This document shows positions 4,257-62,643 of a stretch of DNA of 64,000 bases, in pieces. The notes below the pieces were generated by a model. That model worked only from the letters and a program-made list of their open reading frames with translations, was not told the origin of the DNA and searched no databases. Position 1 is the first letter of the stretch. The number at the start of each line of letters is the position of its first letter. The translations under genes were made by a program, and so were the position numbers. The stretch lies in the IMG/VR virus record IMGVR_UViG_3300009011_000001, positions 1 through 64,000 of that record. One strand, 5' to 3'.

Positions 4257-4289
4257 CATATACGCCCGGCATTGAGCCGGGCGTATATG
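4257..4289. terminator. Bidirectional hairpin, CATA...TATG family
   Basis: Perfect 14-bp stem CATATACGCCCGGC-attga-GCCGGGCGTATATG between convergent genes. Confidence 0.75.
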
Positions 4290-4300
4290 TCGCAATCAGA

Positions 4301-5158: not shown

Positions 5159-5229
5159 GAAGGTATAGACTCCGGCTAATTCAGGGGTAAAGATTCCATA
5201 TCAGAACTATTAAGTTACTACCATTCCCT

Positions 5230-5261
5230 ATACTGTGTAATTAAATTCAGCGGAGCATTTA
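5230..5261 (+). promoter_or_regulatory. Promoter-like motif upstream of uvsX
   Basis: ATACTGTG-TAATTAA...GAGCATTTA, repeated at 59890-59918. Confidence 0.45.
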
Positions 5262-5264
5262 AAC

Positions 5265-6740
5265 GTGCCAGTCCCTTTCGGAAACCAGTACCAAAAGAAG
5301 GCAAGACCCTTTTATCCGATGCCCAACATTGGCTTGATTCTCGACATCTCGGCCGGTACTTGGGTACGGGGTCACAGAGGTCAGTGGATCTGTAATGGTG
5401 GGTTCGCGCAGTTCTGGGGCATCATCGCTGAACCGAACATGTTTAAGTCCACGCTGGCAGCCGGTTGTGCAGGCGCTGTGATGCGCGCCTTTGACGATTC
5501 GGCCATGCATGCTCATGACACTGAGTCCAGCATGCAAGCGCGTCGTGTAGAGCGTCTGGTGCGCGAAGCAATGATGATTGACCTTCCGGGCATTCACGTC
5601 CCTGAAGATCTCATCGAAGCAGGCCGCCTGTTCTTTACCAGTTCCGTCGATATGGACGGTACTGAAATGATCAACAACTTGAAACAGTTCGCCAAGGACC
5701 GTTTCAAGAACGAAAAGCAAGTTGCCTACGAAATCATCGACCCGACTACCGGCAAGCCGTACATGTACTTCACTCCAGTTATCGAGTTCACTGACTCGTT
5801 CTCTGGTCTGAAGACTGAAGGCGCCACTGAAATGCTCGAGAAGAACGATGTGGGTTCTTCCGATAACAACATGTTGGCAATGAAGGTCAACAGCGGTAAG
5901 AGCCAGATCATCGACCAAGCACCTGACTTGGTTGCGAAGCATGGCATCTACTGGCTGACCACCGGCCATATCGGCCAGACCTACCAGCTCGACCCGCGTA
6001 AGCCTACAGTCAAACTGCTGAAGGCAATGAAGGGCGATCTGAAGATCAAGCGTATTCCTGAGAACTACTCGTTCCAGACCGGCAACTGCTACGCCATTAC
6101 CTACTTCAGTACGCTGATGGGCGACGACAAACGTGCCGAGTTCCCATGGTCGCCTGAGTCGGTTGACACCACCACCGACTTGATCGAAATCCGCGTAACG
6201 AACTTCCGTGGCAAGTTCGGTATCGACAACATCCCTCTGCCTTTGATCATCTCGAAGAAAGAAGGTTTGCTGCCGTACATGTCCAACTTCTACTACCTGC
6301 TGCGTAACGCCAACCGTTACGGTCTGGTAGGCAACAACCTGAACTACGCGCTGGCTCTGCGCCCTGAAGTATCGCTCGGCCGAACCAAAGTGCGCATGAA
6401 GCTGCGCGAGTCCTATGCGTTGCAGCGCGCTGCTCACATCCTGATGGAAATGCACTGGGATATGACAGCTGCATTGAACTTCCCGGAAGAGCTGCGCTGC
6501 GAACCAACGCAACTGTATGAAGAAATCAAGGCCATGGGGTACGATTGGGATCTTCTCCTGAATACTCGGTACTGGCACAGTACTGTGGAACAAGGCGAAC
6601 GCACCCCGTTCCTCTCGACTCGAGATCTTCTGCTGATGCGGGTGAACGAATACCACCCGTACTGGTACCCAAAAACCCGTAAAGAAATGGGCCTACCCGA
6701 GATCGAAACTCAAGGGAGTGAGCCAACAGCAACCGCATAA
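5265..6740 (+). CDS. uvsX: UvsX/RecA-like recombinase (phiKZ gp152-like), 491 aa
   Basis: PNIGLILDISAG...NGG N-terminus, Walker A-like AEPNMFKST, acidic Walker B region IEFTDSFS, strand motif VTNFRGKFG, and phiKZ-family gene position. Confidence 0.85.
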   Translation: MPVPFGNQYQKKARPFYPMPNIGLILDISAGTWVRGHRGQWICNGGFAQFWGIIAEPNMFKSTLAAGCAGAVMRAFDDSAMHAHDTESSMQARRVERLVREAMMIDLPGIHVPEDLIEAGRLFFTSSVDMDGTEMINNLKQFAKDRFKNEKQVAYEIIDPTTGKPYMYFTPVIEFTDSFSGLKTEGATEMLEKNDVGSSDNNMLAMKVNSGKSQIIDQAPDLVAKHGIYWLTTGHIGQTYQLDPRKPTVKLLKAMKGDLKIKRIPENYSFQTGNCYAITYFSTLMGDDKRAEFPWSPESVDTTTDLIEIRVTNFRGKFGIDNIPLPLIISKKEGLLPYMSNFYYLLRNANRYGLVGNNLNYALALRPEVSLGRTKVRMKLRESYALQRAAHILMEMHWDMTAALNFPEELRCEPTQLYEEIKAMGYDWDLLLNTRYWHSTVEQGERTPFLSTRDLLLMRVNEYHPYWYPKTRKEMGLPEIETQGSEPTATA

Positions 6741-9023: not shown

Positions 9024-9435
9024 ACTCAACAGGAGGTGGGACGTAGCCTTCAGGGAGAATGGAGTTGATCCGTTGTCCGGTGACTTCGCGTTCTTGCCCA
9101 ACAGCGAGGAATGGATCTCGGCCGGCGAACATTTCGCGGATGCCACGAACGGCGTCGATGGCATTGCGGCCGTTGTCGGTCGCCTTCTCTTCGATGTCGA
9201 GTTTACGGGTGGTGAGTGCTGATTGATCCATGCCGTTGAGGATCTGAATCAGGTCGCCGGGTTTGTCAGGCATCTGCGTACCGCCGACCGTCAGGACGTC
9301 GGCAGCAAAGTAACGCATTTTCTGAGTAAACCGTACAACGGCCATCGGGTCAGTGTCGCGTTCAAGTAAGCCTTGCACTGGCTCTACTCGGTTTGGTCCT
9401 GGCGTTGCTGGGAACGGATCATGATCTTCCATCAC
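8953..9435 (-). CDS. Conserved hypothetical protein, 160 aa
   Basis: GAGGT RBS on the minus strand; natural-looking helical sequence; converges on and overlaps 8259-9023 by 71 nt. Confidence 0.7.
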   Translation of the reverse strand: MMEDHDPFPATPGPNRVEPVQGLLERDTDPMAVVRFTQKMRYFAADVLTVGGTQMPDKPGDLIQILNGMDQSALTTRKLDIEEKATDNGRNAIDAVRGIREMFAGRDPFLAVGQEREVTGQRINSILPEGYVPPPVEFKPGERDQGEAMLDVSDFVSQDE

Positions 9436-9465
9436 TGCTTACCTCTTTCCCTCTAAGGAGGGGAC

Positions 9466-10955: not shown

Positions 10956-11005
10956 ATACAGCAGAGGCGAAAGCCTCTGCTGTATGCCCTTCTTTCTTTT
11001 TTTTT
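10956..11005 (+). terminator. Intrinsic terminator, CATA...TATG family
   Basis: 13-bp stem ATACAGCAGAGGC-gaaa-GCCTCTGCTGTAT followed by a long T tract. Confidence 0.85.
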
Positions 11006-12050: not shown

Positions 12051-12082
12051 CATACAGCCAGCCCTTGCGGGCTGGCTGTATG
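12051..12082. terminator. Bidirectional hairpin, CATA...TATG family
   Basis: Perfect 14-bp stem CATACAGCCAGCCC-ttgc-GGGCTGGCTGTATG between convergent genes. Confidence 0.8.
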
Positions 12083-22554: not shown

Positions 22555-25500
22555 ATGGCCGAGCTACTCAATTACGACCGGTATCGGTTGCGCTACATGT
22601 TGTTCAAGAGCAGCCAGTTTACAGCGCCGGTTGTTTACCCTATCCTGAAACTCACGCTTCCGAAGTTCTCCATCCTGCACTACGCTCCAGCCGACGGCGT
22701 AACCGTAGGTCCGCAAATCAGCGATCCGTTGATGCGGTCTGTGCCTGGCGTGATCTACATCGATCATGTCAAGCAGTACACGGCACCTGAAGGTAATCCG
22801 ATCCGGACGTTCACTTCGCCTGACACGATGATCACGGCATTCCGTCAAAGGAACCGTGCATTCCGTCCGCTGCGTAAGCTCGAACGTCTGGAGACGGATG
22901 ATCGGACTGTAATTGTTTTCAACTACAGCATGCTCAGCCACATGGTTCGTTATGCGACGTCGTTCCGTGCTGGCTGGTACATGTGGCGTAACGTCTACGC
23001 AGAAGTGCTGGACAATGTGAACAAGCTGGCTGCTGTCAGTAAGCGTCATCAGTTCATCGAGCTGAACCTGCCTGAAATCATGCCGGGCCTCGGTACGCTG
23101 CGTGAGTTCACCACTCGGCAAACGGCAGACACACTGAACTCGCTGCGCGATGACGGTTCGAAGCAAATCGCTGACCTGTTTGTTTGGGCCGGCAAGATGC
23201 GTGAAAACAGTCTGCTGAATCACATCCATCCCGATAACTACGATAAGGTGAACTTGATTGTTCGCCGCCTCAATGGCTTTATCGTGGTCAATCTGGGCTG
23301 GCTGAATCGGATGCGTCTTGATCCAGCGAATAAGTCGAAGGGCGTGACCTACGATCCTGCGATGTTCCAGCTCATGCTGCTGAAGTTCTTGATGGTTATC
23401 CATCAGGCAACTACTCCGATCGAAACGCAGACCCGAACCGAGGTTCTCGAACCCCTCGTCGAAATCGAGGGTGATGCTGGCGGTCTGGATGACGTTGAAC
23501 TGAACATCGGTTACGAGGAGCACGAGGAGTCGGAAGAGCTGCTTGACGATAAGGTCTCGATCGCAGCACTTGAGAAAGAGCTGGAAGAGCTTGACGAGAT
23601 CCGTAAGCGTGCTGCTGAAGATGCTGTCGAATACACCGAAGATGGCGAGAAGCTTGAAGTCAAGGCAATCGACGTCAACGTGTTGGCATCTGACCGTGCT
23701 GCTAAATCGTCTGGCTCGGCCATTGTCGACAAGGCAACTGAACTGGTTGGCAAGGGCGTCATTCTGACGGCTGCTGACTACAAGCGTATCGTTCGAGTAT
23801 CGGAAGCTTTCAATAATCTTCCGGACCCTTACGGTGGCGATGAAAAGCTGGTGGATGCGATCAAGATTCCAGATGAGGATATCGAGATCAAACCCACGGT
23901 GCTCGGTGATGCAAGTGAGGTCACTGACCCATCGCTGATTGTGTCCAAGACCGATACCTTTGAGCGTCAGTACATCGAGAAGGTGTTGAAGAAAGACATC
24001 ATCCGTTGTGTGTCCGCTATCCAGAAAGCGCCTCTGGCGATCACTGGATACAGCATCGACCGCATGACTGATGCCAGTAACGATCAGGAAATCCACACCG
24101 TCAAGATCACTCCAGCCGTGGGCGAGCCTTCGACGATCAAGTTCCCCATCCCGGTCGTTAAGTCCGATGGTTCGTTCCTTTATAACGGCACGCGTTACCG
24201 GATGCGTAAGCAACGTTCCGATTTGCCTATCCGTAAGTTGAGCCCGACTCAGGTTGGTCTTAACAGCTATTACGGCAAGGTCTTCATCGAGCGGTCTGAG
24301 CGCAAGCACTTCAACTACGAAAAGTGGTTCATGGGTCAGCTGATCATCAAGGCGCTGAATCCAGAAGACCCGGACATCAGCAAAGCGATGCTCAGCTCGG
24401 TGGCCGATTACACGGCTGACGTGCCTCGTCTGTACACCTCGATCTCTGAACGGATCATGTCGTTGGTGTGCGGTAAGAACACGCTGTGGTTTGACCACAA
24501 GCGGCGCTTCGAGAAGTTCGAGTACACCGATGCCGATAAAGCCTTTGAAAAGAAAGGCTGGGTGCTGATTGGCTGGAATGACCAAAAGCAAGCGCTGATC
24601 ATGGACCACAACAACATGATCTACCGAATTGTTCCTGACGCCAATGGCGGTAATTTGGAAGAAGTCGGTACGTTGTTTGAGCTGCTGGGTGTTCCTGCTG
24701 ACACAACCACACCGATCAGTGCAATCGAAGTAAAGGTCTATTCGAAGAACATTCCGATGGGCCTGGTGCTTGCTTATCTTCTCGGTTTCAGAAAGCTGTT
24801 GGAACTGTTGAAGGTAAGGCCTCGTCGCGTGCTTGCCGGCGCTCGCCTCAACCTTGAGCCTGACGAATACGCCATTCGCTTTGTCGATGAGTCGCTCGTC
24901 TTCAGTCGCAAGGATGTGGTGCCGACGCTGATCCTCTCTGGCTTTAACTTGGCCAAGGATTCGATCCGCAACTACGGCAGTCAGATGTTTGAAGGCAAGG
25001 ATGTCTACAGCGCTATCTTTGATCGGTCTGGCATTGGTGCTCGTTTCCTGCGCGAGCTGGATTCTCTCGACACCATGTTTGTTGACCCGATCACGGAAGA
25101 CCTGCTCAAGTGGATGAAAGAGCCGACTACCTTCACCGGCCTGCTGGTTCGTGCTGCGGAGATGCTGGTTACCTCCAAGGTTGACGAAACCCGCAAAGAT
25201 AAGGACGGTGTTGTCGAGCTTCTGGAGCGTGTGCGCGGCTACGAGCGTATCGCCGGTATGGTTTATGAAAACCTGTCCAAGCGTGTGCGTGAGTACAACG
25301 CAAGAGCACCGGGTGGTCGAGCCAGTGTGAAGATGAACCCCACTGACCCGATCAACATGTTGATCAAAGATCCAACAACCTCGCCTGTCAACAATATCAA
25401 CCCGATCCATGCACTGCGGGAACGGGAAGTGATCACCTTCGGTGGTCGCGGTGGTCGAAGTCGTCGAGCGATGGTTGCAAGAACGCGGCTCTTCAAAAGA

Positions 25501-26817
25501 ACCGACATGGGCTTGATCTCTGAAGGTACAGTGGACAGTGGTGACGTGGGCATTATTGCCTACATGCCGCAGAACGCAAACCTGACGACGGTCCGTGGTA
25601 CTGTTCGCCAGTTCAACGCAAAAACAGATGGCGCTACATCGATCATGTCGACTCCGGCTCTGCTGGGTGTTGGCGCGGACGGTGACGATCCTAAACGGAT
25701 TGGTTTCTCTGCCATTCAGCACGGTCACGGTATCGCAACAGAAAACTACGAATCAGCACCAGGCCGCACTGGCATGGAATCCATGATCGCTGCTCGATCT
25801 GGTCCTGAGTTTGCTCAGGTTGCTGCTCGGAAGGGTAAGGTCATTGAAGTCGGCAACCACCACATCGCTGTGGAATATGAAGACGGTGAAGTTTTCCGTG
25901 CTCCATTGGGTATGTTGCACACCAACGCGGAAGGTACGCTGTATCCGAACACGTTGGTAACGGGTCTGAAAGTTGGCGATACCGTCGATCAGTTCGACGT
26001 GTTGAGTTACAACACAGGCTTCTTCAAACCTAGTCCTTTCAATGCTCGTCGTGTTGACTACACCCCTGGCTGTGTAGCCCGGGTAGCGATCCGTGAAGCC
26101 ACGTACACGTTGGAAGACTCCTGCTCTCTTTCCGAATCGTTTGCTGCTCGAATGAAGACGAAAGTAACGAAACCTAAACCGATCAATGTGGACTTCCATG
26201 ACTCTGTCTTGGGGCTCGTAAAGGTCGGCCAACGGGTGGACTTGGATACAACTCTATGTAGTATCGAGGGCGCGGTGTCGTCGGCAGCTGGACTGTTCGA
26301 TGACTCTAACGTGGACACGCTGAAACTGTTTACCCCGTCGTCTCCAAAAGCCAAAGTTGTAGGGGTCGTGTCCAAGATCGAAGTTCTCTACAACGGGGAC
26401 ATCGAGGACATGTCCGAATCCCTGCAAGTCATCGTCGCCGAGTCTGAAAAGAATCGTCGCCGTATGGCCAAAGCACTGGGCGAGGAATACACCACGGGGC
26501 TCATTGGTCGGAACGTGCGCACCGAGGGCGTCAACCTCGAACCGCATCGTGCGATGATCTTGGTTTACATCGACGCCGAAGTTCCAATGGGTATCGCTGA
26601 CAAGCTGGTGATTGGTAATCAGATGAAGTCTGTGGTGGGTGCGGTTCTGTTTGGTGACAACTTCACAGAATCGAACGAACCAGTCGACATCATCTTCGGT
26701 GCTCTCTCTGCGGTGAACCGTATCGTTACCGGGCTATTTACGGGTGGCTCGTTGAACACAGTGGTACGGATTATCGGAGAAGAGGCGTACAAGATGTATT
26801 TTGAAGATGCAGCATAA
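22555..26817 (+). CDS. Virion RNA polymerase beta subunit, large part (phiKZ gp178-like), 1420 aa
   Basis: Beta-like motifs GSFLYNGTRY, ITFGGRGGRS, EGTVDSGDVG, YTLEDS, ADKLVIGNQMKSVV. Confidence 0.93.
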   Translation: MAELLNYDRYRLRYMLFKSSQFTAPVVYPILKLTLPKFSILHYAPADGVTVGPQISDPLMRSVPGVIYIDHVKQYTAPEGNPIRTFTSPDTMITAFRQRNRAFRPLRKLERLETDDRTVIVFNYSMLSHMVRYATSFRAGWYMWRNVYAEVLDNVNKLAAVSKRHQFIELNLPEIMPGLGTLREFTTRQTADTLNSLRDDGSKQIADLFVWAGKMRENSLLNHIHPDNYDKVNLIVRRLNGFIVVNLGWLNRMRLDPANKSKGVTYDPAMFQLMLLKFLMVIHQATTPIETQTRTEVLEPLVEIEGDAGGLDDVELNIGYEEHEESEELLDDKVSIAALEKELEELDEIRKRAAEDAVEYTEDGEKLEVKAIDVNVLASDRAAKSSGSAIVDKATELVGKGVILTAADYKRIVRVSEAFNNLPDPYGGDEKLVDAIKIPDEDIEIKPTVLGDASEVTDPSLIVSKTDTFERQYIEKVLKKDIIRCVSAIQKAPLAITGYSIDRMTDASNDQEIHTVKITPAVGEPSTIKFPIPVVKSDGSFLYNGTRYRMRKQRSDLPIRKLSPTQVGLNSYYGKVFIERSERKHFNYEKWFMGQLIIKALNPEDPDISKAMLSSVADYTADVPRLYTSISERIMSLVCGKNTLWFDHKRRFEKFEYTDADKAFEKKGWVLIGWNDQKQALIMDHNNMIYRIVPDANGGNLEEVGTLFELLGVPADTTTPISAIEVKVYSKNIPMGLVLAYLLGFRKLLELLKVRPRRVLAGARLNLEPDEYAIRFVDESLVFSRKDVVPTLILSGFNLAKDSIRNYGSQMFEGKDVYSAIFDRSGIGARFLRELDSLDTMFVDPITEDLLKWMKEPTTFTGLLVRAAEMLVTSKVDETRKDKDGVVELLERVRGYERIAGMVYENLSKRVREYNARAPGGRASVKMNPTDPINMLIKDPTTSPVNNINPIHALREREVITFGGRGGRSRRAMVARTRLFKRTDMGLISEGTVDSGDVGIIAYMPQNANLTTVRGTVRQFNAKTDGATSIMSTPALLGVGADGDDPKRIGFSAIQHGHGIATENYESAPGRTGMESMIAARSGPEFAQVAARKGKVIEVGNHHIAVEYEDGEVFRAPLGMLHTNAEGTLYPNTLVTGLKVGDTVDQFDVLSYNTGFFKPSPFNARRVDYTPGCVARVAIREATYTLEDSCSLSESFAARMKTKVTKPKPINVDFHDSVLGLVKVGQRVDLDTTLCSIEGAVSSAAGLFDDSNVDTLKLFTPSSPKAKVVGVVSKIEVLYNGDIEDMSESLQVIVAESEKNRRRMAKALGEEYTTGLIGRNVRTEGVNLEPHRAMILVYIDAEVPMGIADKLVIGNQMKSVVGAVLFGDNFTESNEPVDIIFGALSAVNRIVTGLFTGGSLNTVVRIIGEEAYKMYFEDAA

Positions 26818-32874: not shown

Positions 32875-32906
32875 CATACAGGCAGGGCACACGCCCTGCC
32901 TGTATG
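32875..32906. terminator. Hairpin, CATA...TATG family
   Basis: Perfect 14-bp stem CATACAGGCAGGGC-acac-GCCCTGCCTGTATG. Confidence 0.8.
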
Positions 32907-35171: not shown

Positions 35172-35201
35172 ATACAGCTGGGGGCCAACCCCAGCTGTAT
35201 G
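35172..35201. terminator. Hairpin, (C)ATAC...GTATG family
   Basis: 12-bp stem ATACAGCTGGGG-gccaa-CCCCAGCTGTAT. Confidence 0.7.
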
Positions 35202-36014: not shown

Positions 36015-36047
36015 GCATACAGCCCGGCATTGCGCCGGGCTGTATGC
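36015..36047. terminator. Hairpin at tail tube 3' end, CATA...TATG family
   Basis: GCATACAGCCCGGC-attgc-GCCGGGCTGTATGC. Confidence 0.8.
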
Positions 36048-44483: not shown

Positions 44484-46646
44484 ATGGCTATTTTGTATAA
44501 GAAGGATTGGGAGAAATACCCAACTGCAATCGCTAACGTCTACTCGCCCAATGAGTCCTGGGTGCAGATGGCGTTCAAATTAAAAGAGATGGGTGTAAAC
44601 AACTGGGAGTGGCCTCTCACTCTGATCCAGCCTCAATTGGTGGGCGTCGATATCTGGTCTCCTGACCTGACACTCAACCAGCAGATCATGATTCTGAACG
44701 AATGCGAATGGAACCCGTGGTACGTTCTTCGTGAAGTAATGCGTGTGCCAGCAAAGTCTGGTGGTGGTTTTAACTACCTTGGGGCTAACCGAGGCAACCT
44801 TGCGTTGTTCTGGTGTTTCTTCAACTCGTTCATGGTTTACCTGCAGCAGATCCGTCAGACAGGTAAGTCACTTAACGTTCGCATCCTCGTTGTTGCGTGG
44901 CACACGTTCTGGGCGCGTGGCGCTCAGCACATCCTCTTCACCAAGTCTGACCTGCGTGTTGAAGAGATTAAGGAATACAAGCTGATCCGCAGCCTGATTC
45001 CTGAGTGGATGTGGGAGCCGCACTACAAAGACTCGGACAACCAAACTGCGTTCACCACCCTGTCTCGTGGCAACACCACCAAGACCTACATTCCTGCAAC
45101 CGATGAGGAAGGTGCGAACAAAGTGGGGCGCGGTACAACCCCTACTCTGGTGACGGGTGACGAAGGTCCCTTCTTGAAGCACGCTCGGATTTCGATTGTG
45201 GCACTGTTGTCTGCAACCGGTGCATCGTTCCGTGAAGCTGAAGCGAAGGGCGCAATGTTTGGCGTTATCTTCACCACTACCGCAGGCGACTTGTCGACGG
45301 AGTCCGGTAAGTACTTCTACAACAAGATCAAACGCATGTCGATGCACTTCGCAGAGTTCCTCTACGACTGTGCCAACCGGGATGAGGCAATCGCCACCAT
45401 TCTGGCTAACGGGGCTAAAGAAGAACCTCGTGTCGACATTACATTCAGCCACAGACAGCTGGGTATCTTGGACAGTGATCTTCGCAAGATGATTGCGCGT
45501 TCGTCCGGTGAAGTGGACCAGGTGAAGCGAGACTATCTGAACCAATGGACGTTCGGTAGTGCCGCTTGCCCTATTCCTCAGGACATCCTCGACAAGATCC
45601 GTAAAGGGATCAACGACCAGCCGCTGAACGACCGTAACGGCAAGAACCAGTTCATCATTCGCTATCACTTGCCGATTGCTCAGGTTATCGCGCGTCGCAC
45701 CATTCTGGGCATGGATACCTCGAACGCTATCGGTCGAGATGCTATTTCCGGGATCCTGTCCGATGTGGAAACTGGCGAGACATTGGCAGCGTTTACTGTC
45801 AGCGAATCGAACCTCAGTATCTTCACCATGTGGCTGGCTGACTTGTTTGAACTCTGGCCTTTGATGACCTTGGTTCCAGAAGCCAAATCGTCGTGGGACG
45901 GTATTCGGGATCGTTTGCTGATCGAACTGCCTTCTCGCGGTATCGACCCAGGTCGTCGTATCTACAGCCGCGTTGTCGATGATGCTGAAAGCAGTGAATC
46001 GGATCGCCGTCGTTATCGAGAGTATTCGCAAGGTGTTCCGAGCGAACGTAAGTACGCACCGCACCGTAACCAATTCGGTTTCCCAACCAGCGGCACACTT
46101 CGTGAGTCGATGTACGGCGAAATCCTGCGTGAAGCTACCAAGAATGGACCAGGTCTGATTCGTGACCAAATCCTGATCGATGAATTGTCGAGTCTTGTAA
46201 TGAAACGTGGCCGTATTGACCACGCTGCATCTGGACACGATGACCACGTAATCTCTTGGCTGATGAACCAGTGGTTCCTGCGGTATGCGCGTAACTACGA
46301 TCACTACGGCATTCCTTCTCAGTCGGTACTGTCCCGTCTGCGTCATGCTGCTGTGGCTGATGATCCAAAAGAAACTTCAAGGATGATGAAGCAGGAAAAG
46401 CTCAAGCGTCAGGTTGCCGAGCTGGAAGCCCGGATCGAGAATGCGAAATCCGCAATGGAAATCGCGTACTACCAAACCCGTGTGAACTCTCTGCGGTCGG
46501 AAATGACTGAGGAAGACAACAGTCAGATCGACAGTGTGGATCGCGCATCCGAACGGAGTCGCGAAGTACGGCAGAACTATGCCAAAGAGAAATACCGCAA
46601 CACCTCAATCGCAGAGCAAATTCGCCCTACTTGGTTGAGAAGGTAA
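44484..46646 (+). CDS. terL: Terminase large subunit (phiKZ gp25-like), 720 aa
   Basis: Walker A QIRQTGKS, Walker B LVTGDE, nuclease motifs ILGMDTS and HDDHVISWL. Confidence 0.93.
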   Translation: MAILYKKDWEKYPTAIANVYSPNESWVQMAFKLKEMGVNNWEWPLTLIQPQLVGVDIWSPDLTLNQQIMILNECEWNPWYVLREVMRVPAKSGGGFNYLGANRGNLALFWCFFNSFMVYLQQIRQTGKSLNVRILVVAWHTFWARGAQHILFTKSDLRVEEIKEYKLIRSLIPEWMWEPHYKDSDNQTAFTTLSRGNTTKTYIPATDEEGANKVGRGTTPTLVTGDEGPFLKHARISIVALLSATGASFREAEAKGAMFGVIFTTTAGDLSTESGKYFYNKIKRMSMHFAEFLYDCANRDEAIATILANGAKEEPRVDITFSHRQLGILDSDLRKMIARSSGEVDQVKRDYLNQWTFGSAACPIPQDILDKIRKGINDQPLNDRNGKNQFIIRYHLPIAQVIARRTILGMDTSNAIGRDAISGILSDVETGETLAAFTVSESNLSIFTMWLADLFELWPLMTLVPEAKSSWDGIRDRLLIELPSRGIDPGRRIYSRVVDDAESSESDRRRYREYSQGVPSERKYAPHRNQFGFPTSGTLRESMYGEILREATKNGPGLIRDQILIDELSSLVMKRGRIDHAASGHDDHVISWLMNQWFLRYARNYDHYGIPSQSVLSRLRHAAVADDPKETSRMMKQEKLKRQVAELEARIENAKSAMEIAYYQTRVNSLRSEMTEEDNSQIDSVDRASERSREVRQNYAKEKYRNTSIAEQIRPTWLRR

Positions 46647-46649
46647 CGA

Positions 46650-46682
46650 CATACAGCCCGGCCGCAATGGCCGGGCTGTATG
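46650..46682. terminator. Bidirectional hairpin, CATA...TATG family
   Basis: Perfect 14-bp stem CATACAGCCCGGCC-gcaat-GGCCGGGCTGTATG between convergent genes. Confidence 0.8.
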
Positions 46683-51781: not shown

Positions 51782-52010
51782 AGAAAAAAGCAAATACCCG
51801 ATCGCCGACATGGGCGAAAACTTCCAGCCTGATGCGATGGAAGACTGGGATCGCCGGGTGGCTTCCGGTGAGTTCGACAACTTGTCCATGGAGCAGATCC
51901 GTGCCAAGTACGTCCAGGAAGAAGCGGACTTCGTCGAACAGCAAGAGGAAGCCGAGATGTACGAAGAACTGAACCGTCGCGAAGAACGCGAAGCGGATCA
52001 GGACGACTAA
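51774..52010 (+). CDS. Highly acidic small protein, 78 aa
   Basis: GAGGAG RBS; 26 D/E vs 9 K/R by hand count; followed by a terminator. Confidence 0.8.
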   Translation: MSEEKSKYPIADMGENFQPDAMEDWDRRVASGEFDNLSMEQIRAKYVQEEADFVEQQEEAEMYEELNRREEREADQDD

Positions 52011-52022
52011 CCACAACCTACC

Positions 52023-52060
52023 AGCAGGTGCCTTCGGGCACCTGCTTTTATTTTTCTTTT
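52023..52060 (+). terminator. Intrinsic terminator
   Basis: AGCAGGTGCC-TTCG-GGCACCTGCT followed by a T tract. Confidence 0.9.
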
Positions 52061-52080
52061 CATTTTAAGGATAGGTTTTA

Positions 52081-55823: not shown

Positions 55824-55849
55824 CCCCCCTATTGGTCCAGGTGAATAAA

Positions 55850-56488
55850 ATGATTGAGATCATGACTCTTCCTCCACAGGAAGCGCCAAAGCAACTCACT
55901 GCTCGTCAGGTTTGTGAAAGCCTTGGCGAACATTACGAAGCATTCCTCGCAGCAAACAACATCAAGGGCTGGGTCATTGACGATCACGTTCTTGACAATA
56001 GCCACATCTCTGACGTGCTCTTCAGGATTAGCGCCACTACAGGGCTTTACGTCGGTCGTCTGAGTAACGAGGGAGGTCACCTCAGAAAACTAGCCAAGGA
56101 AGCAGGCAACGATGCTCCTTTGCATTTCTGGCTAAACTGTGCCGCAAGAGCGCTTGGCTATCGAAGCTATCATTTAGCCCACTGCTGTCGCCGTGAAAAC
56201 GGCTTCGTTGAAAACCTTTGGCCAGAAGGCGCATTGATGAACCCGGATGATTTCGGGGAAGAGCTGCCAAAGGAAAGAGAGCACCGCAGAATCGTTCAGG
56301 CAATGAACAAGAACTATCGCGCCAACAGGTTGCGTGATCGTCAATACAACCAACTCAGGAGAGCTTTAGAAGCAGCGAGCAAAGAAGGCTCGCGTGTGGC
56401 TAACCATCGCTGGAAAGAATTGAAAGAGTCGAAGAAGAAAGAGCTTAAGAAGCAACGAGGCATTCCGGTACAATACCGGATCAGTTAA
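55850..56488 (+). CDS. Putative DNA-binding protein (HTH-like segment plus very basic tail), ~212 aa
   Basis: AGGTG RBS. HLRKLAKEAG...LHFWLNCAARALGYRSY resembles the recalled glyoxalase-superfamily-protein HTH pattern; K/R-rich C-terminal helix. Confidence 0.55.
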   Translation: MIEIMTLPPQEAPKQLTARQVCESLGEHYEAFLAANNIKGWVIDDHVLDNSHISDVLFRISATTGLYVGRLSNEGGHLRKLAKEAGNDAPLHFWLNCAARALGYRSYHLAHCCRRENGFVENLWPEGALMNPDDFGEELPKEREHRRIVQAMNKNYRANRLRDRQYNQLRRALEAASKEGSRVANHRWKELKESKKKELKKQRGIPVQYRIS

Positions 56489-56493
56489 GTTCA

Positions 56494-56539
56494 GATAGGG
56501 TCCAGCGCAGGCTGGGCCTTACGCCTTTCTTTCTTTTTT
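56494..56539 (+). terminator. Intrinsic terminator
   Basis: AGGGTCCAGC-gcag-GCTGGGCCTT followed by a T tract. Confidence 0.75.
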
Positions 56540-56589
56540 GTTAACTTTACACCATGCCCTTTATCTTATGTTCCACCAACAAAACTTCT

Positions 56590-56850
56590 TGGGAAAGGGG
56601 AAGAGGGGGTGGATTTCGAGGTACGAGAAATCCGGGGGTGATAGGGATAGGGTAAGACGCAATCCGAAGATGCGAGTGTAACGATGCTGATGAGGATTAT
56701 CTAATGCGACGAAGTCGCATAGGGAAGTTATTTTTTACAGTGTGGTCGAATGATATTCCTTAAATCGGACTGGGCCTAAATACCCAGTCCTGTATGTCGC
56801 AATAGATCCAAAGATAAAGAGCAATAAGGAAGGGAGGCTGAAGGCCTCCC
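56590..56850. other. Structured non-coding region (G-run tract plus five hairpins); candidate origin/primase/packaging signal
   Basis: Hairpins at 56611-56633, 56661-56698, 56704-56720, 56767-56790 and 56832-56850; six runs of at least 3 G in 56591-56652; no credible ORF. Confidence 0.5.
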
Positions 56851-56898
56851 GTCTATAACGATGACCAATTAGATGTAAACTCCACAGGTAATCCTCAC

Positions 56899-57468
56899 AT
56901 GAAAGCTTATTCTGCATTCCTGAATTCCGTAGGTCAGTCCCGTAACCAAGCTTCGATGGAAGCAGGTAAACCGAAAGATCGTGACGACAGCAATACCTTT
57001 GACTCTGCTCAAGACGATGACAAAGGTCTGCGTCTGGCTAGCGAGCCGGGTTACCGCGAAGTGAATAACGTCATGATCGAACTGAACACTCCTCTGGATC
57101 AGTATCAGGACTCGATCACCTTCGTGACTGAATCGTTGCGTAAAGAAGGTTGGAAAGTGCGCCTGCGCTGCAAAGGCGAAGAGATCAGCGTTGAGAGTTT
57201 CAGCGATGGCATCATGCCTGGCGGCATCTCCCTCAATGGTGCCAACGAAGTCAACAACGTGATGAACGGTGTCTACGTCCCTGACTTTAAGGATGAAGAC
57301 CTGTACCGCGCTGTTAGCGTCATCCGTCCTGAGGACACCGCTCCTGATAGCAAAGAGGGCGTATTGTTCTTGGTTGATGGTAATGGTGATATTAAAGATT
57401 ACTTGGCAGGCGAAGGTTATAAGGTCGCAACCGATGCTGATACCCTGCAGGCCTTGTTGACGGCATAA
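56899..57468 (+). CDS. Putative protease-processed head protein, 189 aa
   Basis: ASMEA and SVES are S-x-E motifs of the kind cut by phiKZ-type prohead proteases. Confidence 0.55.
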   Translation: MKAYSAFLNSVGQSRNQASMEAGKPKDRDDSNTFDSAQDDDKGLRLASEPGYREVNNVMIELNTPLDQYQDSITFVTESLRKEGWKVRLRCKGEEISVESFSDGIMPGGISLNGANEVNNVMNGVYVPDFKDEDLYRAVSVIRPEDTAPDSKEGVLFLVDGNGDIKDYLAGEGYKVATDADTLQALLTA

Positions 57469-57532: not shown

Positions 57533-58369
57533 TTACATCCTTGGCTTACCGCCCATGGATAGCTTCATGACCTTACGGTACTTGTCCGGATCCATCAGGA
57601 TCGCGAGCTTCGCCCACTTGACGTCAACGAATTCGTTGTACATCGTGTTGGCATCTGCGTAGCCGTCGATAATCTCGCGGACTCGACCAAGCGTGGCACC
57701 GCCACGAATGAAGCCTTCATCCAAGTCGATAATCAAGGTATTGTAAACGTGCGCTTTAACGGCAAGCACAACCATCTCACCGAAGTCCCGGTAGTACGGT
57801 TGTTTGATGTCGTTGAAGTTGGGCTCGTGACTGACCGTACAACGCAGCGCTGCGTCACCCATCACCTGGTTCGAGTCGTTGACAAGAACGGTGTTGTGGT
57901 TTAGCAACTGAACGTAGGCAGTCCCCATCATTGCAACGCCATTCGTGGCGCGGATGATGTTCCTGACATCTTTCAAGATGCCGGAGTTACGAGAGTCAAA
58001 TCCCGTAGCGGTAGAGCCCGCCAACCCTTGAGTCAATCCGTAGATCAGCTCATGAACTGTGCTGATTTTACGATTCCCCAATGCATGAGGAGGGAACCGA
58101 TAGATAATGTTCCAAGTGTCGACGTACTCACGATCGGCATCGCGCATCGGCAACAAGATTTCCGTACCGCCGACCAAGTTGCAGTCAATGGCGACACGAC
58201 CATCGATGACGAGTTCCCGAATCTTTTCATCGAGGCTGATCGAGTCAACGTTGTCGAAGTAACGGTCTTGACGCGTCGGATCGTAACGTTTTGCAGTAAA
58301 AGCTTGTTGTAAAATCTCGCGAGGGATTTCCCTCATTACACGTTGGATAGCTACGCTGATAGGCGTCAT
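57533..58369 (-). CDS. Virion structural protein (phiKZ gp42-like), 278 aa
   Basis: AGGAG RBS. MTPISVAIQRVMREIPREILQQAF start typical of the recalled family; divergent from phuZ. Confidence 0.65.
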   Translation of the reverse strand: MTPISVAIQRVMREIPREILQQAFTAKRYDPTRQDRYFDNVDSISLDEKIRELVIDGRVAIDCNLVGGTEILLPMRDADREYVDTWNIIYRFPPHALGNRKISTVHELIYGLTQGLAGSTATGFDSRNSGILKDVRNIIRATNGVAMMGTAYVQLLNHNTVLVNDSNQVMGDAALRCTVSHEPNFNDIKQPYYRDFGEMVVLAVKAHVYNTLIIDLDEGFIRGGATLGRVREIIDGYADANTMYNEFVDVKWAKLAILMDPDKYRKVMKLSMGGKPRM

Positions 58370-58431: not shown

Positions 58432-59436
58432 ATGACCTCCGGCCAATTGATTCAGTCGAAAACTCGCAGTGTGACCTTCTACGCCTGTGGCGGTCCTGGC
58501 GCCAATTTGCTGCGCACTCATCGCGAAGATCATCCTCTGGCTAACGCCTCGGCGATTGCTGATGAGAAGTACTGCTTCATCGACACCAGTATTGCCAACC
58601 TGGCTGGCGTCACTCTGGAAGACACTTACGTTCTGGAAGGTCTCGACGGCTCGGGTTCCGATCGCCCTCGTAACGCCAAAGCGATCAAGGAAGCCATGCC
58701 GGCCATCCTGAACAAGTTCAAGCCAGGCGACATCAACATCGTTCTGTTCAGCGCCGCTGGCGGTACCGGTTCGACTGCAGGTCCAATCCTGATCGAAGAA
58801 CTGCTGAAGGCCGGTAAGAAAGTGTTCGCAATCATCAGCGGTGCTCACGGCACCCTGAAGGCAACTGCAAACACCATCGCTACCCTGACCGGTCTGGAAG
58901 GCACCGTCAAACGTGTCAACCGTCCGGTGGTCATGTCGTATCGCGAAAACGATCCGACCAAGAACAATGCCGCCAACAACGTCGTTGCTCTGATGACCAT
59001 GTCGGCCCTGTCTCTGCTGTGCTCCGGCAAGAACATCCAGCTGGACGGCGCAGATATCGGCAACCTGGTCGACTATCCTGCTGTGACTCACTTCCCGGCT
59101 TCTCTGGCCATGCTCGACGTGTACGTCAACGAAGATCAACTGATCAACGAAGCCACCAGCGCTATCGCTCACCTCGCTCTGCTGAAGAACGAAGATGCGG
59201 TAATGCCGGCGATCAACCCAGCCTACGGCAAGTATGGCTACCTGCCAGCAGAAGCTGCTGAACGTTACAAAGAGTCTTTCCACTATGTGGTCAGCAACTC
59301 TCGCCTGAAAGGCGTCCTGGAAAAGCTGCTCCAGCGTCGTGAAGAGCTCGAGTCAGCTCAAGCCGTGATTGAGCGCCAAACCAGCCTGTCGACGCCGAAC
59401 GTGAAGATCGACGAAGACACCGGCCTGGTGTTCTAA
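58432..59436 (+). CDS. phuZ: PhuZ tubulin-like spindle protein, 334 aa
   Basis: YACGGPGANL, FIDTS, GSGSDR, G-box SAAGGTGS, T7-loop LDGAD, acidic-hydrophobic tail IDEDTGLVF. Confidence 0.95.
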   Translation: MTSGQLIQSKTRSVTFYACGGPGANLLRTHREDHPLANASAIADEKYCFIDTSIANLAGVTLEDTYVLEGLDGSGSDRPRNAKAIKEAMPAILNKFKPGDINIVLFSAAGGTGSTAGPILIEELLKAGKKVFAIISGAHGTLKATANTIATLTGLEGTVKRVNRPVVMSYRENDPTKNNAANNVVALMTMSALSLLCSGKNIQLDGADIGNLVDYPAVTHFPASLAMLDVYVNEDQLINEATSAIAHLALLKNEDAVMPAINPAYGKYGYLPAEAAERYKESFHYVVSNSRLKGVLEKLLQRREELESAQAVIERQTSLSTPNVKIDEDTGLVF

Positions 59437-59447
59437 TCACACCGTGA

Positions 59448-59478
59448 CATAGCGAGGCGGGAAACCGCCTCGTTTATG
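59448..59478. terminator. Hairpin, CATA...TATG family
   Basis: CATAGCGAGGCGG-gaaa-CCGCCTCGTTTATG (one bulge). Confidence 0.7.
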
Positions 59479-61268: not shown

Positions 61269-61500
61269 CGATTGCACCGATTGGCAAAGAATGGGCGAGA
61301 AGTTCTCCCAGGATCCGGCTGAAATGATTCCGCTAAGCTACCATCTGGATCAGTGGTGGATGGAGAAAGCAGAAATGATGAATGATCTGTTCGCAGACCT
61401 CATCGCAGCTCGGCCGTTTAAATGGAAGCGGGTATTCGTGTGCGAAGATGAGTTCGCCAAGATTGTAGTCACATCACTCGAGAAAGATCCATGGCCCTAA
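61120..61500 (+). CDS. Array gene 4, hypothetical, ~126 aa
   Basis: Protein-like from TKDFIFDIR onward; start uncertain (61054 or 61120). Confidence 0.7.
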   Translation: MSKSSSKSGSPQTKDFIFDIRALDLGTLADKLLISPDLLLKATLNYLLFDDCTDWQRMGEKFSQDPAEMIPLSYHLDQWWMEKAEMMNDLFADLIAARPFKWKRVFVCEDEFAKIVVTSLEKDPWP

Positions 61501-62251: not shown

Positions 62252-62643
62252 TGCCAGCATACATCATCGACATAGACCTTCCGGCGATCAGCGACCTTGA
62301 GTTGGTCGCTGATCGTCTTATGCACCTGCAGGAATATGAGGAAGAAACTCGAGAGGTTGCGATGACCGATGTTACAGACGCTTTGTTGCATTATTGGTTG
62401 CTCGCAGACTTTGACAGACTGAACCTCTTGCTTGACGACATCAGGGCCGACCGGCCAGGATTCAGGGATCATGAGATCTTTGAAGCTTTTGAACGTCTGG
62501 CCAATCCCTTGAAAGCAGGATACCGCCAACTTAACAGTAGCTCTAAAGCCATTCAGCGCGAACTGCTTGAGGTCGATGAAATCATCACCTACGAAGTGAA
62601 AGTTGACAAGAACTTTAGAACTATTGGGTTCTCTATTTATTGA
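62251..62643 (+). CDS. Array gene 7, hypothetical, 130 aa
   Basis: GAGGA RBS; TAGTG overlap. Confidence 0.82.
   Translation: MPAYIIDIDLPAISDLELVADRLMHLQEYEEETREVAMTDVTDALLHYWLLADFDRLNLLLDDIRADRPGFRDHEIFEAFERLANPLKAGYRQLNSSSKAIQRELLEVDEIITYEVKVDKNFRTIGFSIY

What the first reader, a model, noticed from the sequence alone, without database searches (positions are those of the whole stretch)
56590..56720. Cluster of GNA-triloop hairpins with tandem G.A steps inside a G-quadruplex-capable tract: candidate single-stranded DNA signal
Seen (plus strand). Hairpin 1: GGATTTC-GA-G-[GTA]-C-GA-GAAATCC (56611-56633). Hairpin 2 (56661-56698): AATCC/GGATT, GA/GA, A-T, GA/GA, T.T, GC/GC, bulged T, GA/GA, GT/AC, loop GTA. 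Hairpin 3: ATGCGAC-[GAA]-GTCGCAT (56704-56720). That is three GNA loops and four GA/GA steps in 110 bp. Six G-runs (56591, 56597, 56605, 56634, 56644, 56650) flank hairpin 1. Established: GNA triloops and tandem sheared G.A pairs are especially stable in ssDNA and are strand-specific; they occur in N4 virion RNAP promoters and in single-strand initiation/primosome sites. Inference: a replication origin, priming, packaging or genome-capture signal for a phage family whose origin I do not know to be defined. Ordinary inverted-repeat finders would miss hairpin 2.
Basis: partly seen in the sequence, partly recalled or inferred. Interest (0 to 1): 0.85.

Follow-up and report, generated by a model that had tools for sequence, protein, structure and literature searches.

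The report
Conserved structured small RNA of jumbo phages
The hairpin cluster is real and evolutionarily conserved, but it is most likely a previously undescribed ~170-nt structured non-coding RNA gene shared by a large group of phiKZ-like giant phages, not a single-stranded-DNA replication or packaging signal.

Summary
All three hairpins, the G.A steps and the six G-runs are at the stated coordinates. The tract is the most G-run-rich and purine-rich 70-mer in the window.

The window is the first 64 kb of a 248.6-kb jumbo-phage contig encoding PhuZ tubulin and a multisubunit RNA polymerase. The finding lies in a 410-nt gap between genes.

The core, 56570-56738, recurs in about 9 close relatives, about 37 more distant IMG/VR jumbo-phage contigs and the cultured Pseudomonas phage pPa_SNUABM_DT01. 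Hairpins 1, 2 and 3 all show compensatory base changes.

Conservation starts at a conserved TATNNTATG; TATG with +1 = G is the phiKZ late-promoter motif. It ends at hairpin 3, which in distant members is a phiKZ-type terminator. Typical phage terminators flank the unit. It has no conserved ORF and no Rfam match.

The 5' end is also complementary, with covariation, to the G-run plus the 5' arm of hairpin 1. This suggests a two-state switch.

Best reading: a new family of stand-alone phage sRNA. Its function is unknown; I guess a decoy or regulator acting through SD-like purine tracts. The ssDNA origin/packaging reading has no positive support. A three-tier G-quadruplex is not conserved across the family.

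The parts
56496..56539 (+). Terminator T1 of the upstream 218-aa gene: an 11-pair hairpin, then TTACG (TTATG in relatives), then a C/U-rich tract
   Evidence: Terminator scan. The hairpin covaries in relatives. It has the same build as the other hairpin+TATG sites in the window.
56562..56570 (+). Promoter-like TATCTTATG (family consensus TATNNTATG); putative +1 is G56570
   Evidence: Present at the 5' edge of conservation in essentially every family member. phiKZ nvRNAP late promoters are TATG with the G as +1 (PMC4666361). It occurs only once in the window. The start site itself is inferred.
56570..56738 (+). Conserved core of the non-coding RNA (about 169 nt)
   Evidence: Alignments A1, A2 and A6. 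Covariance-model hits. Nucleotide identity to relatives is 65-96%, against 43-65% at third codon positions of the neighbouring gene. No conserved ORF. No Rfam match.
56572..56577 (+). 5' 'clamp' strand UCCACC, complementary to GGUGGA at 56608-56613
   Evidence: RNAduplex finds an equivalent helix in every clade, and the 5' block changes whenever the hairpin-1 arm changes. It is part of the MFE fold.
56591..56610 (+). Purine-rich block ending in the conserved AAG(A)GGGGGU, an SD-like G-run
   Evidence: Conserved across the family. It is the best pairing site for the 16S 3' tail, but in most members not beyond what composition gives.
56611..56633 (+). Hairpin 1 (HP1): 7-bp stem, tandem G.A, G-C, GUA triloop
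   Evidence: 9 of 9 pairs show compensatory changes in 32 sequences. Relatives have a 9-bp stem with a GAA/GGA/GUA/AAA triloop, or a larger apex built from the same G.A/GNA module.
56634..56654 (+). Second G-run plus purine block, GGGGGUGAUAGGGAUAGGGUA
   Evidence: Conserved even in pPa_SNUABM_DT01, where it reads GGGGGAUGAGAUAGGAAGGGUAUAG.
56655..56702 (+). Hairpin 2 (HP2): AGA/UCU, AAUCC/GGAUU, irregular purine-rich middle, GC/GC, G.A G.A (or G.U), GU/AC, GUA loop
Evidence: Helices 3-6 of A6 are 84-100% paired, with double changes and a conserved G.U in 16 of 22 sequences.
56704..56720 (+). Hairpin 3 (HP3): 7-bp stem with GAA triloop; probable terminator hairpin
   Evidence: 6 of 7 pairs covary. 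In distant members HP3 is followed directly by CTTATA/CTATATAG, the phiKZ terminator signature of 'stem-loop + TTAT' (PMC10914365).
56728..56736 (+). UUAUUUUUU tract after HP3; candidate 3' end
   Evidence: Conserved in the close clade. The actual 3' end is inferred.
56767..56796 (+). Terminator T2: hairpin GGACTGGG..CCCAGTCC, then TGTATG; the TATG may also serve as the start for the downstream mRNA
   Evidence: It is one of 16 hairpin+TATG sites in the window. It is nearly invariant in relatives. TATGTCGCAAT is shared with the site at 4286.
56797..56898 (+). Conserved leader of the 189-aa gene, carrying an AAUAAGGAAGGGAGG + hairpin module (56832-56850)
   Evidence: Conserved in A1. The module is present 2-4 times in L015, L004 and L016. 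It is not part of the RNA core.

Best explanation
The finding is the core of a stand-alone gene for a structured non-coding RNA of about 170 nt (up to about 225 nt if it ends at T2). It is transcribed on the + strand by the phage's own phiKZ-like multisubunit RNA polymerase. Transcription would start at the G of a conserved TATNNTATG (G56570) and end at hairpin 3 with its U-tract, or at the next terminator T2. The RNA consists of a pyrimidine-rich 5' block, a purine-rich block ending in AAGGGGGU, hairpin 1, a second G-run and purine block, the long irregular hairpin 2, and hairpin 3. The hairpins are built from a recurring module: helix, tandem G.A, two pairs, GNA triloop. The 5' block can instead pair with the first G-run plus the 5' arm of hairpin 1. 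The RNA can therefore take two nearly isoenergetic states that hide or expose the G-rich tracts. Shown here: structure conservation, family membership, flanking transcription signals and absence of coding potential. Inferred: that it is transcribed, its exact ends, and its function. My best guess for function is a trans-acting decoy or regulator. Its conserved single-stranded, SD-like purine tracts would bind a pyrimidine-rich partner, such as the 16S 3' tail on 30S subunits, C/U-rich phage leaders, or a purine/GGA-binding protein. The 5' clamp versus hairpin 1 switch would gate that binding. The stated confidence of 0.78 applies to 'structured ncRNA gene'; my confidence in the specific decoy mechanism is only about 0.2-0.25.
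For: The window is positions 1-64000 of IMGVR_UViG_3300009011_000001. It encodes PhuZ and a phiKZ-type RNAP beta subunit. The 410-nt gap and the element recur upstream of the 189-aa gene homologue in about 9 distinct relatives. Core nucleotide identity exceeds the third-codon-position identity of the adjacent gene in every comparison. HP1, HP2 and HP3 covary. Model R1, built only from close relatives, found the element in about 25 further jumbo-phage loci, with E from 1e-33 to about 1e-2. These loci were fetched through the neighbouring DUF7484 gene, and the element is always on the strand opposite that gene. The 5'-half model R2 added members it was not trained on: L053 and L056 at E about 6-8e-13, plus weaker hits. 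Homologue in the cultured phage pPa_SNUABM_DT01: R1 matched MW735835.1 119637-119846, an unannotated gap, weakly, with E about 1e-4 to 4e-3. The downstream gene in that phage is unrelated, so the element is not tied to one gene. Conservation begins at TATNNTATG in all members, and phiKZ late promoters are TATG with +1 = G. HP3 followed by CTTAT/CTATA matches the phiKZ terminator motif. Flanking hairpin+TATG terminators occur at 16 of 136 TATG sites, against 1-3% for control tetramers. Conserved G.U and G.A pairs and 72-83% purine content make the fold specific to this strand. The 5' clamp helix tracks the HP1 arm across clades, for example UCCACC/GGUGGA, AUCACU/GGUGGU, AGUCUUGCUC/GGGGGUAAGACU and GAUCAUCCC/GGGGGUGAUU. 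At the base after the G-run, U-A, G.U and C-G alternate. The two states lie within 1-3 kcal/mol. phiKZ itself makes short intergenic or 5'UTR-derived ncRNAs of 70-200 nt, confirmed by Northern blot.
Against: There are no expression data for any member, so the TSS, the 3' end and even transcription are inferred from motifs. TATG is short, and in this phage it is also part of the terminator motif. In the window clade HP3 is separated from its U-tract by 7 nt, which is not canonical. Single-sequence fold z-scores are weak. The structure evidence would hold equally for the + strand as ssDNA. For the decoy idea: complementarity to the anti-SD is not above composition in most members (mean z = -0.97). 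The GGA count looks about what purine content predicts, by my own rough estimate rather than a tool result. No partner was identified. The clamp helix was assessed per sequence against shuffles; mean z was -1.75 and several members were individually not significant. It was not assessed on a single structural alignment.
Confidence: 0.78

Rival explanations
1. It is a cis-acting leader or attenuator. The RNA would be the 5' part of the mRNA of the downstream gene(s). The clamp/HP1 switch and HP3 would act as a conditional terminator, riboswitch-like or protein-dependent, yielding a '5'UTR-derived ncRNA' by premature termination, as described for phiKZ.
For: phiKZ has 17 such candidates in which a terminator sits just downstream of a promoter. 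Mutually exclusive helices are typical of expression platforms. The element always sits upstream of co-oriented genes.
Against: The downstream gene differs between clades. In the window a second full terminator, T2, lies between the core and the gene. In DT01 a hairpin+TATG site and then a canonical terminator (GTCAGC-GCAA-GCTGAC + T-run) lie between them. The spacer after HP3 is variable and takes large insertions. I found no helix that competes with HP3 itself. No Rfam riboswitch matches.
Confidence: 0.14
2. It is a single-stranded DNA signal. The + strand hairpins would form in unwound or displaced DNA and serve as a replication origin, primosome or priming site, packaging signal, or hairpin promoter.
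For: C-GAA-G and tandem sheared G.A hairpins are known to be unusually stable in DNA (established knowledge, recalled, not tested here). The DNA-parameter fold is slightly better than shuffles (z = -1.8). The covariation evidence cannot tell RNA from the same strand of DNA. No origin is defined for these phages.
Against: The conservation boundary coincides with a transcription-start motif and a terminator-type hairpin, for which a DNA signal has no need. The unit is bracketed by terminators. Conserved G.U-type pairs, including in the clamp helix, are less favourable as G.T in DNA. No GC-skew inflection at 56.6 kb. No iterons or AT-rich unwinding element in the core. One copy per locus, so it is not a dispersed promoter class. 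The RNAP is phiKZ-type multisubunit, not N4-type.
Confidence: 0.04
3. The functional core is a G-quadruplex, in RNA or DNA, formed by G-tracts on both sides of hairpin 1, with the hairpin sitting in the central loop.
For: The window has six G>=3 runs, the most of any 70-mer in the window. The two runs abutting HP1 are conserved in nearly all members. Most members have >=4 G>=3 tracts.
Against: Seven of about 30 members (L047-49, L044, L037, L070) have only two G>=3 tracts, so a three-tier quadruplex is not family-wide. The first G-run is instead paired with the 5' block, with covariation. The outer G-tracts drift in position and length.
Confidence: 0.04

Closest known systems
phiKZ short intergenic / 5'UTR-derived ncRNA candidates (Putzeys et al. 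2024, PMC10914365; Grad-seq candidates cited there)
   Same: A jumbo phage with its own multisubunit RNAP. A short (70-200 nt), structured, ORF-less unit between a phage promoter and a 'stem-loop + TTAT' terminator in an intergenic gap. Sequence conserved among relatives. Function unknown.
   Different: I found no sequence or structure similarity. The two long gaps near phiKZ PhuZ look unrelated, and the models found nothing in the 18-kb phiKZ stretch searched. The rest of the phiKZ genome was not searched. The present family has no expression data.
Protein-sponge sRNAs of the CsrB/RsmY/RsmZ type
   Same: A small RNA made of hairpins separated by purine-rich single strands with many GGA motifs (4-8 in the 5' half). 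One host of the family is Pseudomonas, which uses RsmA (recalled knowledge).
   Different: No Rfam match to any Csr/Rsm family even at E<=10. GGA motifs lie mostly outside hairpin loops. Their number looks about what purine content predicts (my own rough estimate). No alternative 5' clamp is known for those sponges.
Riboswitch / RNA-thermometer expression platforms that mask an SD-like sequence
   Same: A pyrimidine-rich strand pairs with an SD-like G-run (AAGGGGGU) in competition with a neighbouring hairpin. The two states are close in energy.
   Different: No start codon follows the SD-like run. The short ORF inside HP1 of DT01-type members is not conserved (sequences). No known aptamer is present and no ligand is known.
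ssDNA hairpin signals: N4 virion-RNAP promoters, phiX174/G4-type priming sites, d(GCGAAGC) mini-hairpins
   Same: Short stems closed by GNA triloops with sheared G.A pairs. The structure is strand-specific.
   Different: One copy, about 170 nt and multi-domain. It is bracketed by transcription signals. The host phage is a dsDNA jumbo phage with a multisubunit RNAP. There is no evidence that this DNA is ever single-stranded.

Membership tests
Any Rfam 15 RNA family | Covariance-model score at or above the family's gathering threshold | tested here: not met
   No hit in the whole window at gathering thresholds. In 56300-57100 at E<=10 there were only six sub-threshold chance hits, none overlapping the core.
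phiKZ-type transcription unit | Start motif TATG, with G as +1, at the 5' end of the unit | tested here: met
   TATNNTATG lies at the 5' edge of conservation in all members. The motif definition comes from PMC4666361. The actual TSS is not testable here.
phiKZ-type transcription unit | Terminator made of a stem-loop followed by TTAT | tested here: met
   HP3 + CTTATA/CTATATAG in DT01-type members. T2 is a hairpin + TGTATG in the window. In the window clade HP3 + 7 nt + TTATTTTTT is only approximate. The motif comes from PMC10914365.
phiKZ-type transcription unit | The phage encodes a phiKZ-like multisubunit RNAP | tested here: met
   Window 22555-26817 matches phrog_3148, RNA polymerase beta subunit, with E = 0.
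Stand-alone structured ncRNA | Secondary structure conserved, with compensatory substitutions | tested here: met
Stand-alone structured ncRNA | No conserved reading frame | tested here: met
   The longest stop-free stretches differ by frame among relatives, and indels are not multiples of three.
Stand-alone structured ncRNA | A discrete transcript is detected | not testable with these tools
   No transcriptome data are available for any member.
N4-type hairpin promoters for a virion RNAP | Several dispersed copies upstream of early genes, and an N4-like single-subunit virion RNAP | tested here: not met
   One copy in the 64-kb window and one per related locus. The RNAP found is multisubunit beta-like. 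Only 64 kb of the 248.6-kb genome was searched.
Replication origin / primosome assembly site | GC-skew switch, iterons or an AT-rich unwinding element; initiation mapped to the site | tested here: inconclusive
   No skew inflection near 56.6 kb and no iterons.
Three-tier G-quadruplex element | Four or more G>=3 tracts conserved in all members | tested here: not met
   The window has 6, but 7 of about 30 members have only 2.
CsrB/RsmZ-type sponge | Many GGA motifs displayed in hairpin loops; homology to Csr/Rsm RNAs | tested here: inconclusive
   4-8 GGA motifs in the 5' half. Most are single-stranded or in stems, and their number looks not clearly above composition (my own rough estimate). No Rfam match. 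Protein binding is not testable.
Riboswitch | A conserved aptamer plus mutually exclusive helices that control a terminator or an RBS | tested here: inconclusive
   Mutually exclusive helices are present. They do not involve HP3 or a real RBS. The ligand is unknown.

The most novel reading that the evidence does not exclude
The RNA is a gated decoy. Late in infection the phage would make an sRNA whose SD-like G-tracts (AAGGGGGU ... GGGGGUGAU) are unmasked by the switch between the 5' clamp and hairpin 1. Once exposed, they would capture the 16S anti-SD on 30S subunits, or a purine/GGA-binding global regulator or phage export factor, and so reprogram translation in cells where transcription is confined to a phage nucleus. 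The G.A/GNA hairpin modules would be docking sites for a dedicated phage protein.
Probability: 0.15. Interest if true: 0.85.

Novelty: new variant of a known kind. Interest (0 to 1): 0.62.

Why it matters
RNA biology of nucleus-forming and related jumbo phages is almost unexplored. A few phiKZ ncRNA candidates exist, and none has a structure model or a known function. This element is a covariation-supported RNA family found in dozens of uncultured jumbo phages and in at least one cultured Pseudomonas aeruginosa phage, so it can be tested directly. It is conserved more strongly than the silent sites of neighbouring genes. Its architecture is unusual: G-runs abutting a hairpin, repeated G.A/GNA modules and a covarying alternative 5' helix. 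If it acts on ribosomes, a global regulator or mRNA handling, it would be a new layer of host take-over. It would also be a possible handle for engineering therapeutic jumbo phages. It further shows that stable-in-DNA motifs (GNA triloops, sheared G.A pairs) seen in raw sequence can belong to an RNA.

Tried and rejected
- **GenBank phages:** blastn of the region found nothing. A 7-kb query gave only a 96-bp hit in the DUF7484 gene.
- **Exact-pattern scans:** GGGGGTGGAT..ATCCGGGGG(..GGGA) in IMG/VR and JGI metagenomes returned only the known contigs plus chance hits: L018, L022, L023, L024 and L026.
- **189-aa protein family searches:** in IMG/VR and GTDB genomes these added nothing.
- **Long-range inverted repeats I1-I4 in the gap:** they do not covary in relatives (my reading), so I rejected them.
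- **Alifold 'helix 1' (CUUCUU/GGGGAAG):** only 84% paired and inconsistent in distant members, so I did not adopt it.
- **Closing stem between the 5' AAAACUUCUU and the 3' AGGGAAGUU:** no covariation and absent in DT01; rejected.
- **Small ORFs:** the 33/47-aa ORFs at 56538-56681, and a 7-aa ORF inside HP1 of DT01-type members, are not conserved.
- **Resemblances in the window sequence:** GUACGAGA to the sarcin-ricin loop, and UGAUGA to box C. Neither is conserved in relatives.
- **phiKZ gaps near PhuZ:** unrelated.
- **TATCTTATG or the T-rich/GTTAAC box as a repeated promoter in the window:** not repeated.
- **Supplementary tables of PMC10914365:** not held.
- **Clamp constraint for the window:** it was mis-indexed by one base, so that single 'forced' energy (-29.0) should be ignored. 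The unconstrained MFE already contains the clamp.

Full report
**What is in the sequence.**
- The finding lies in a 410-nt gap, 56489-56898.
- The gap sits between a 218-aa ORF (55832-56488) and a 189-aa ORF (56899-57468), both on the + strand.
- Folding the 171-nt segment alone is unremarkable: z = -1.1 as RNA, -1.8 as DNA, -2.4 for the opposite strand.
- The whole gap folds better than shuffles, with z = -3.4 on the + strand.
- The 70-mer 56590-56659 has the highest number of G>=3 runs and the highest purine fraction of 6393 overlapping windows.
- GNA-triloop hairpins with at least 5 perfect pairs are rare: 4 on the + strand and 3 on the - strand in 64 kb.

**Whose genome this is.** The window equals positions 1-64000 of IMGVR_UViG_3300009011_000001, a 248.6-kb contig.
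- It encodes a PhuZ-type tubulin at 58432-59436.
- It encodes a phiKZ-type multisubunit RNA polymerase beta subunit at 22555-26817, and virion proteins.
- It is therefore a phiKZ-like jumbo phage.
- It has no close GenBank relative: PhuZ is at most 38% identical to known phages, and blastn found no match for the region.

**Close relatives.** The 189-aa protein has eight homologous clusters at 57-81% identity.
- I fetched their contigs. Every one whose contig reaches far enough has the same long non-coding gap upstream.
- The aligned gaps show a core, window 56570-56738, that is strikingly conserved. It is followed by a variable AT-rich spacer that takes insertions.
- Core identity to the window is 65-96%. 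Third codon positions of the adjacent gene are only 43-65% identical.
- No reading frame is conserved.
- RNAalifold recovers hairpins 1, 2 and 3 with compensatory changes.

**A much wider family.** I built model R1 from the close clade only. It gave a weak hit in the cultured Pseudomonas aeruginosa phage pPa_SNUABM_DT01.
- The hit is at MW735835.1 119637-119846, an unannotated 400-nt gap.
- Its layout matches the window's: TATAGTATG, a pyrimidine-rich block, a purine-rich block ending in GGGGGU, a hairpin, GGGGG plus GAGAUAGGAAGGGUAUAG, a long hairpin, then GUGAGGC-GAA-GCCUCAC followed by CUUAUA.
- The gene downstream of it is unrelated to the window's 189-aa gene.
- The neighbouring DUF7484 protein is 41% identical between the two phages.

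I then used a DUF7484 alignment to fetch 63 IMG/VR jumbo-phage loci.
- R1 found the element in about 25 of them, with E from 1e-33 to about 1e-2.
- It is always on the strand opposite the DUF7484 gene and 0.7-4 kb away.
- A 5'-half model, R2, raised the count to about 37 of the 60 loci searched; roughly 9 of these are marginal hits with E between about 0.001 and 1. It found members it was not trained on, such as L053 and L056 at E about 6-8e-13.
- Loci whose DUF7484 protein is 36% identical or less gave nothing better than one marginal hit (L085, E = 0.92).
- An 18-kb stretch of phiKZ and a 10.8-kb stretch of Xanthomonas phage RTH11 gave nothing. These partial loci do not exclude the element elsewhere in those genomes.

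**Structure.**
- On 31 sequences, 93.8% of cells pair, against 43-54% for slid partners. Twenty-five of 32 pairs show double-sided changes.
- Hairpin 1 is the clearest: all 9 pairs covary and 92% of cells pair, against 17-44% slid.
- Hairpin 1 arms vary widely, for example GGAUUUC, GGUGUUUAC, GGAAUUUGC, GGUAUA, AGACUAAU, AGCUUUAA and GAUUUAAU, each with its matching partner.
- Hairpin 3 covaries at 6 of 7 pairs.
- Hairpin 2 keeps its outer, middle and apical stems and a conserved G.U.
- The window's mid-stem G.A steps in hairpin 2 are Watson-Crick pairs in several relatives.
- The apical CGAG..CGA(U) motif is invariant in the window-type group.
- One module recurs: helix, tandem G.A, two pairs, GNA triloop. 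It appears in the window's hairpin 1, in hairpin 2's apex, and in the enlarged apex of hairpin 1 in distant members (UGACGAACGNAGUGAGGA).
- These alignments were fitted to the models, which favours the modelled structure. The slid-partner controls and the diversity of arm sequences argue that the signal is real.

**RNA or DNA?** Structure conservation alone cannot tell. The context points to RNA.
- Conservation starts abruptly at TATNNTATG in every member, while the 45 nt upstream are variable. In phiKZ, TATG with the G as +1 is the late-promoter motif of the non-virion RNAP (PMC4666361).
- In distant members hairpin 3 is followed directly by CTTATA or CTATATAG. That is the 'stem-loop + TTAT' signature of phiKZ intrinsic terminators (PMC10914365).
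- In this window, 16 of 136 TATG sites are immediately preceded by a perfect 8-12-bp hairpin, against 1-3% for control tetramers. Many of these sites are bidirectional.
- One such site (T1, with TTACG here and TTATG in relatives) precedes the unit, and another (T2, 56767-56796) follows it. The core is therefore a self-contained, ORF-less unit between two terminators.
- G.U and G.A pairs and 72-83% purine content make the fold specific to the sense strand.
- There is no GC-skew inflection and there are no iterons.
- phiKZ is already known to make short intergenic or 5'UTR-derived RNAs of 70-200 nt.
- None of this proves transcription. That remains the key untested step.

**An unexpected second helix.** In every clade, nucleotides about +3 to +12 are complementary to the first G-run plus the 5' arm of hairpin 1.
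- Examples:
  - UCCACC/GGUGGA in the window (56572-77 with 56608-13).
  - AUCACU/GGUGGU in L043.
  - AGUCUUGCUC/GGGGGUAAGACU in DT01.
  - GAUCAUCCC/GGGGGUGAUU in L074.
  - AGAGUUACCC/GGGUAGCUUU in L070.
- At the base after the G-run, U-A, G.U and C-G alternate among members.
- Mean z against shuffled 5' blocks is -1.75.
- This helix overlaps hairpin 1 by 3 nt in the window and by 6-7 nt in DT01.
- The two states differ by only about 1 kcal/mol in the window and about 3 kcal/mol in DT01. The window's forced-clamp value in that call was mis-indexed and should be ignored.
- I read this as a conformational switch. It was not tested on a single structural alignment.

**Function.** This is inference.
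- The most conserved unpaired sequences are the purine tracts around hairpin 1, with consensus RAAGGGGGU, hairpin, GGGGG.
- AAGGGGGU can pair with the 16S tail ACCUCCUU. In some members the match extends to 13 nt (L074).
- In most members this is no better than shuffled purine-rich sequence (mean z = -0.97).
- The GGA motif count (4-8) looks about what composition predicts, by my own rough estimate rather than a tool result.
- A three-tier quadruplex is possible in the window but not in 7 of about 30 members.
- I therefore commit only weakly to a gated decoy or regulator acting through these tracts. A cis leader or attenuator is the main rival.

**Verdict.** The ssDNA origin/packaging interpretation is not supported. 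The best explanation is a new, widely conserved structured sRNA family of phiKZ-like jumbo phages, with a cultured member available for testing.

Noticed in passing
window 4261-4289, 10959-10986, 12055-12082, 32879-32906, 35175-35201, 36020-36046, 46654-46682, 59453-59478, 62285-62322 (several also on the - strand): A recurrent intergenic motif: a perfect 8-12-bp hairpin (often CAG...CTG) followed at once by TATG(C/T)CG. Many sites are palindromic, so TATG follows on both strands. It matches the phiKZ 'stem-loop + TTAT' terminator and may double as a TATG start site.
   Followed up: partly
window 56797-56898; L015, L004/L005 and L016 between T2 and the start codon: The leader of the 189-aa gene carries a conserved module, AAUAAGGAAGGGAGG plus a hairpin (56832-56850). 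It is present once in the window but 2-4 times in tandem, with different stems, in relatives. Its function is unknown.
   Followed up: no
window 4286-4296 and 56793-56803: The 11-mer TATGTCGCAAT follows the terminator hairpin at both sites. This suggests a shared signal downstream of the hairpin.
   Followed up: no
window 5057-5318, 9227-9465, 51890-52080, 61269-61490: Other unusually long gaps without a convincing ORF in a crude gene call. They could hold further non-coding elements and were not examined.
   Followed up: no
L029 2214-2717 (MW735835.1 121758-122261): pPa_SNUABM_DT01 has three annotated ORFs of only 39-51 aa in a row upstream of the DUF7484/PhuZ region. They may be over-annotation of non-coding sequence.
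   Followed up: no
window 57533-58369 (- strand): The DUF7484 (PF24302) protein next to PhuZ is much better conserved than its neighbours: 85-97% identity within the clade where the 189-aa protein is 57-81%. It has about 80 homologous clusters down to 27% identity. It is a good marker for this jumbo-phage lineage, and its function is unknown.
   Followed up: partly
window 44484-46646: This 720-aa ORF matches terminase large-subunit profiles only over its first 140-215 residues. The rest is unmatched, so it may be a divergent or interrupted terminase.
   Followed up: no
L029 ~300-330 and ~355-392: Downstream of the DT01 element lies another hairpin followed by GTGATATG. After it comes a canonical intrinsic terminator (GTCAGC-GCAA-GCTGAC + T-run), all before the next gene. 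There may be a second tiny transcription unit.
   Followed up: no
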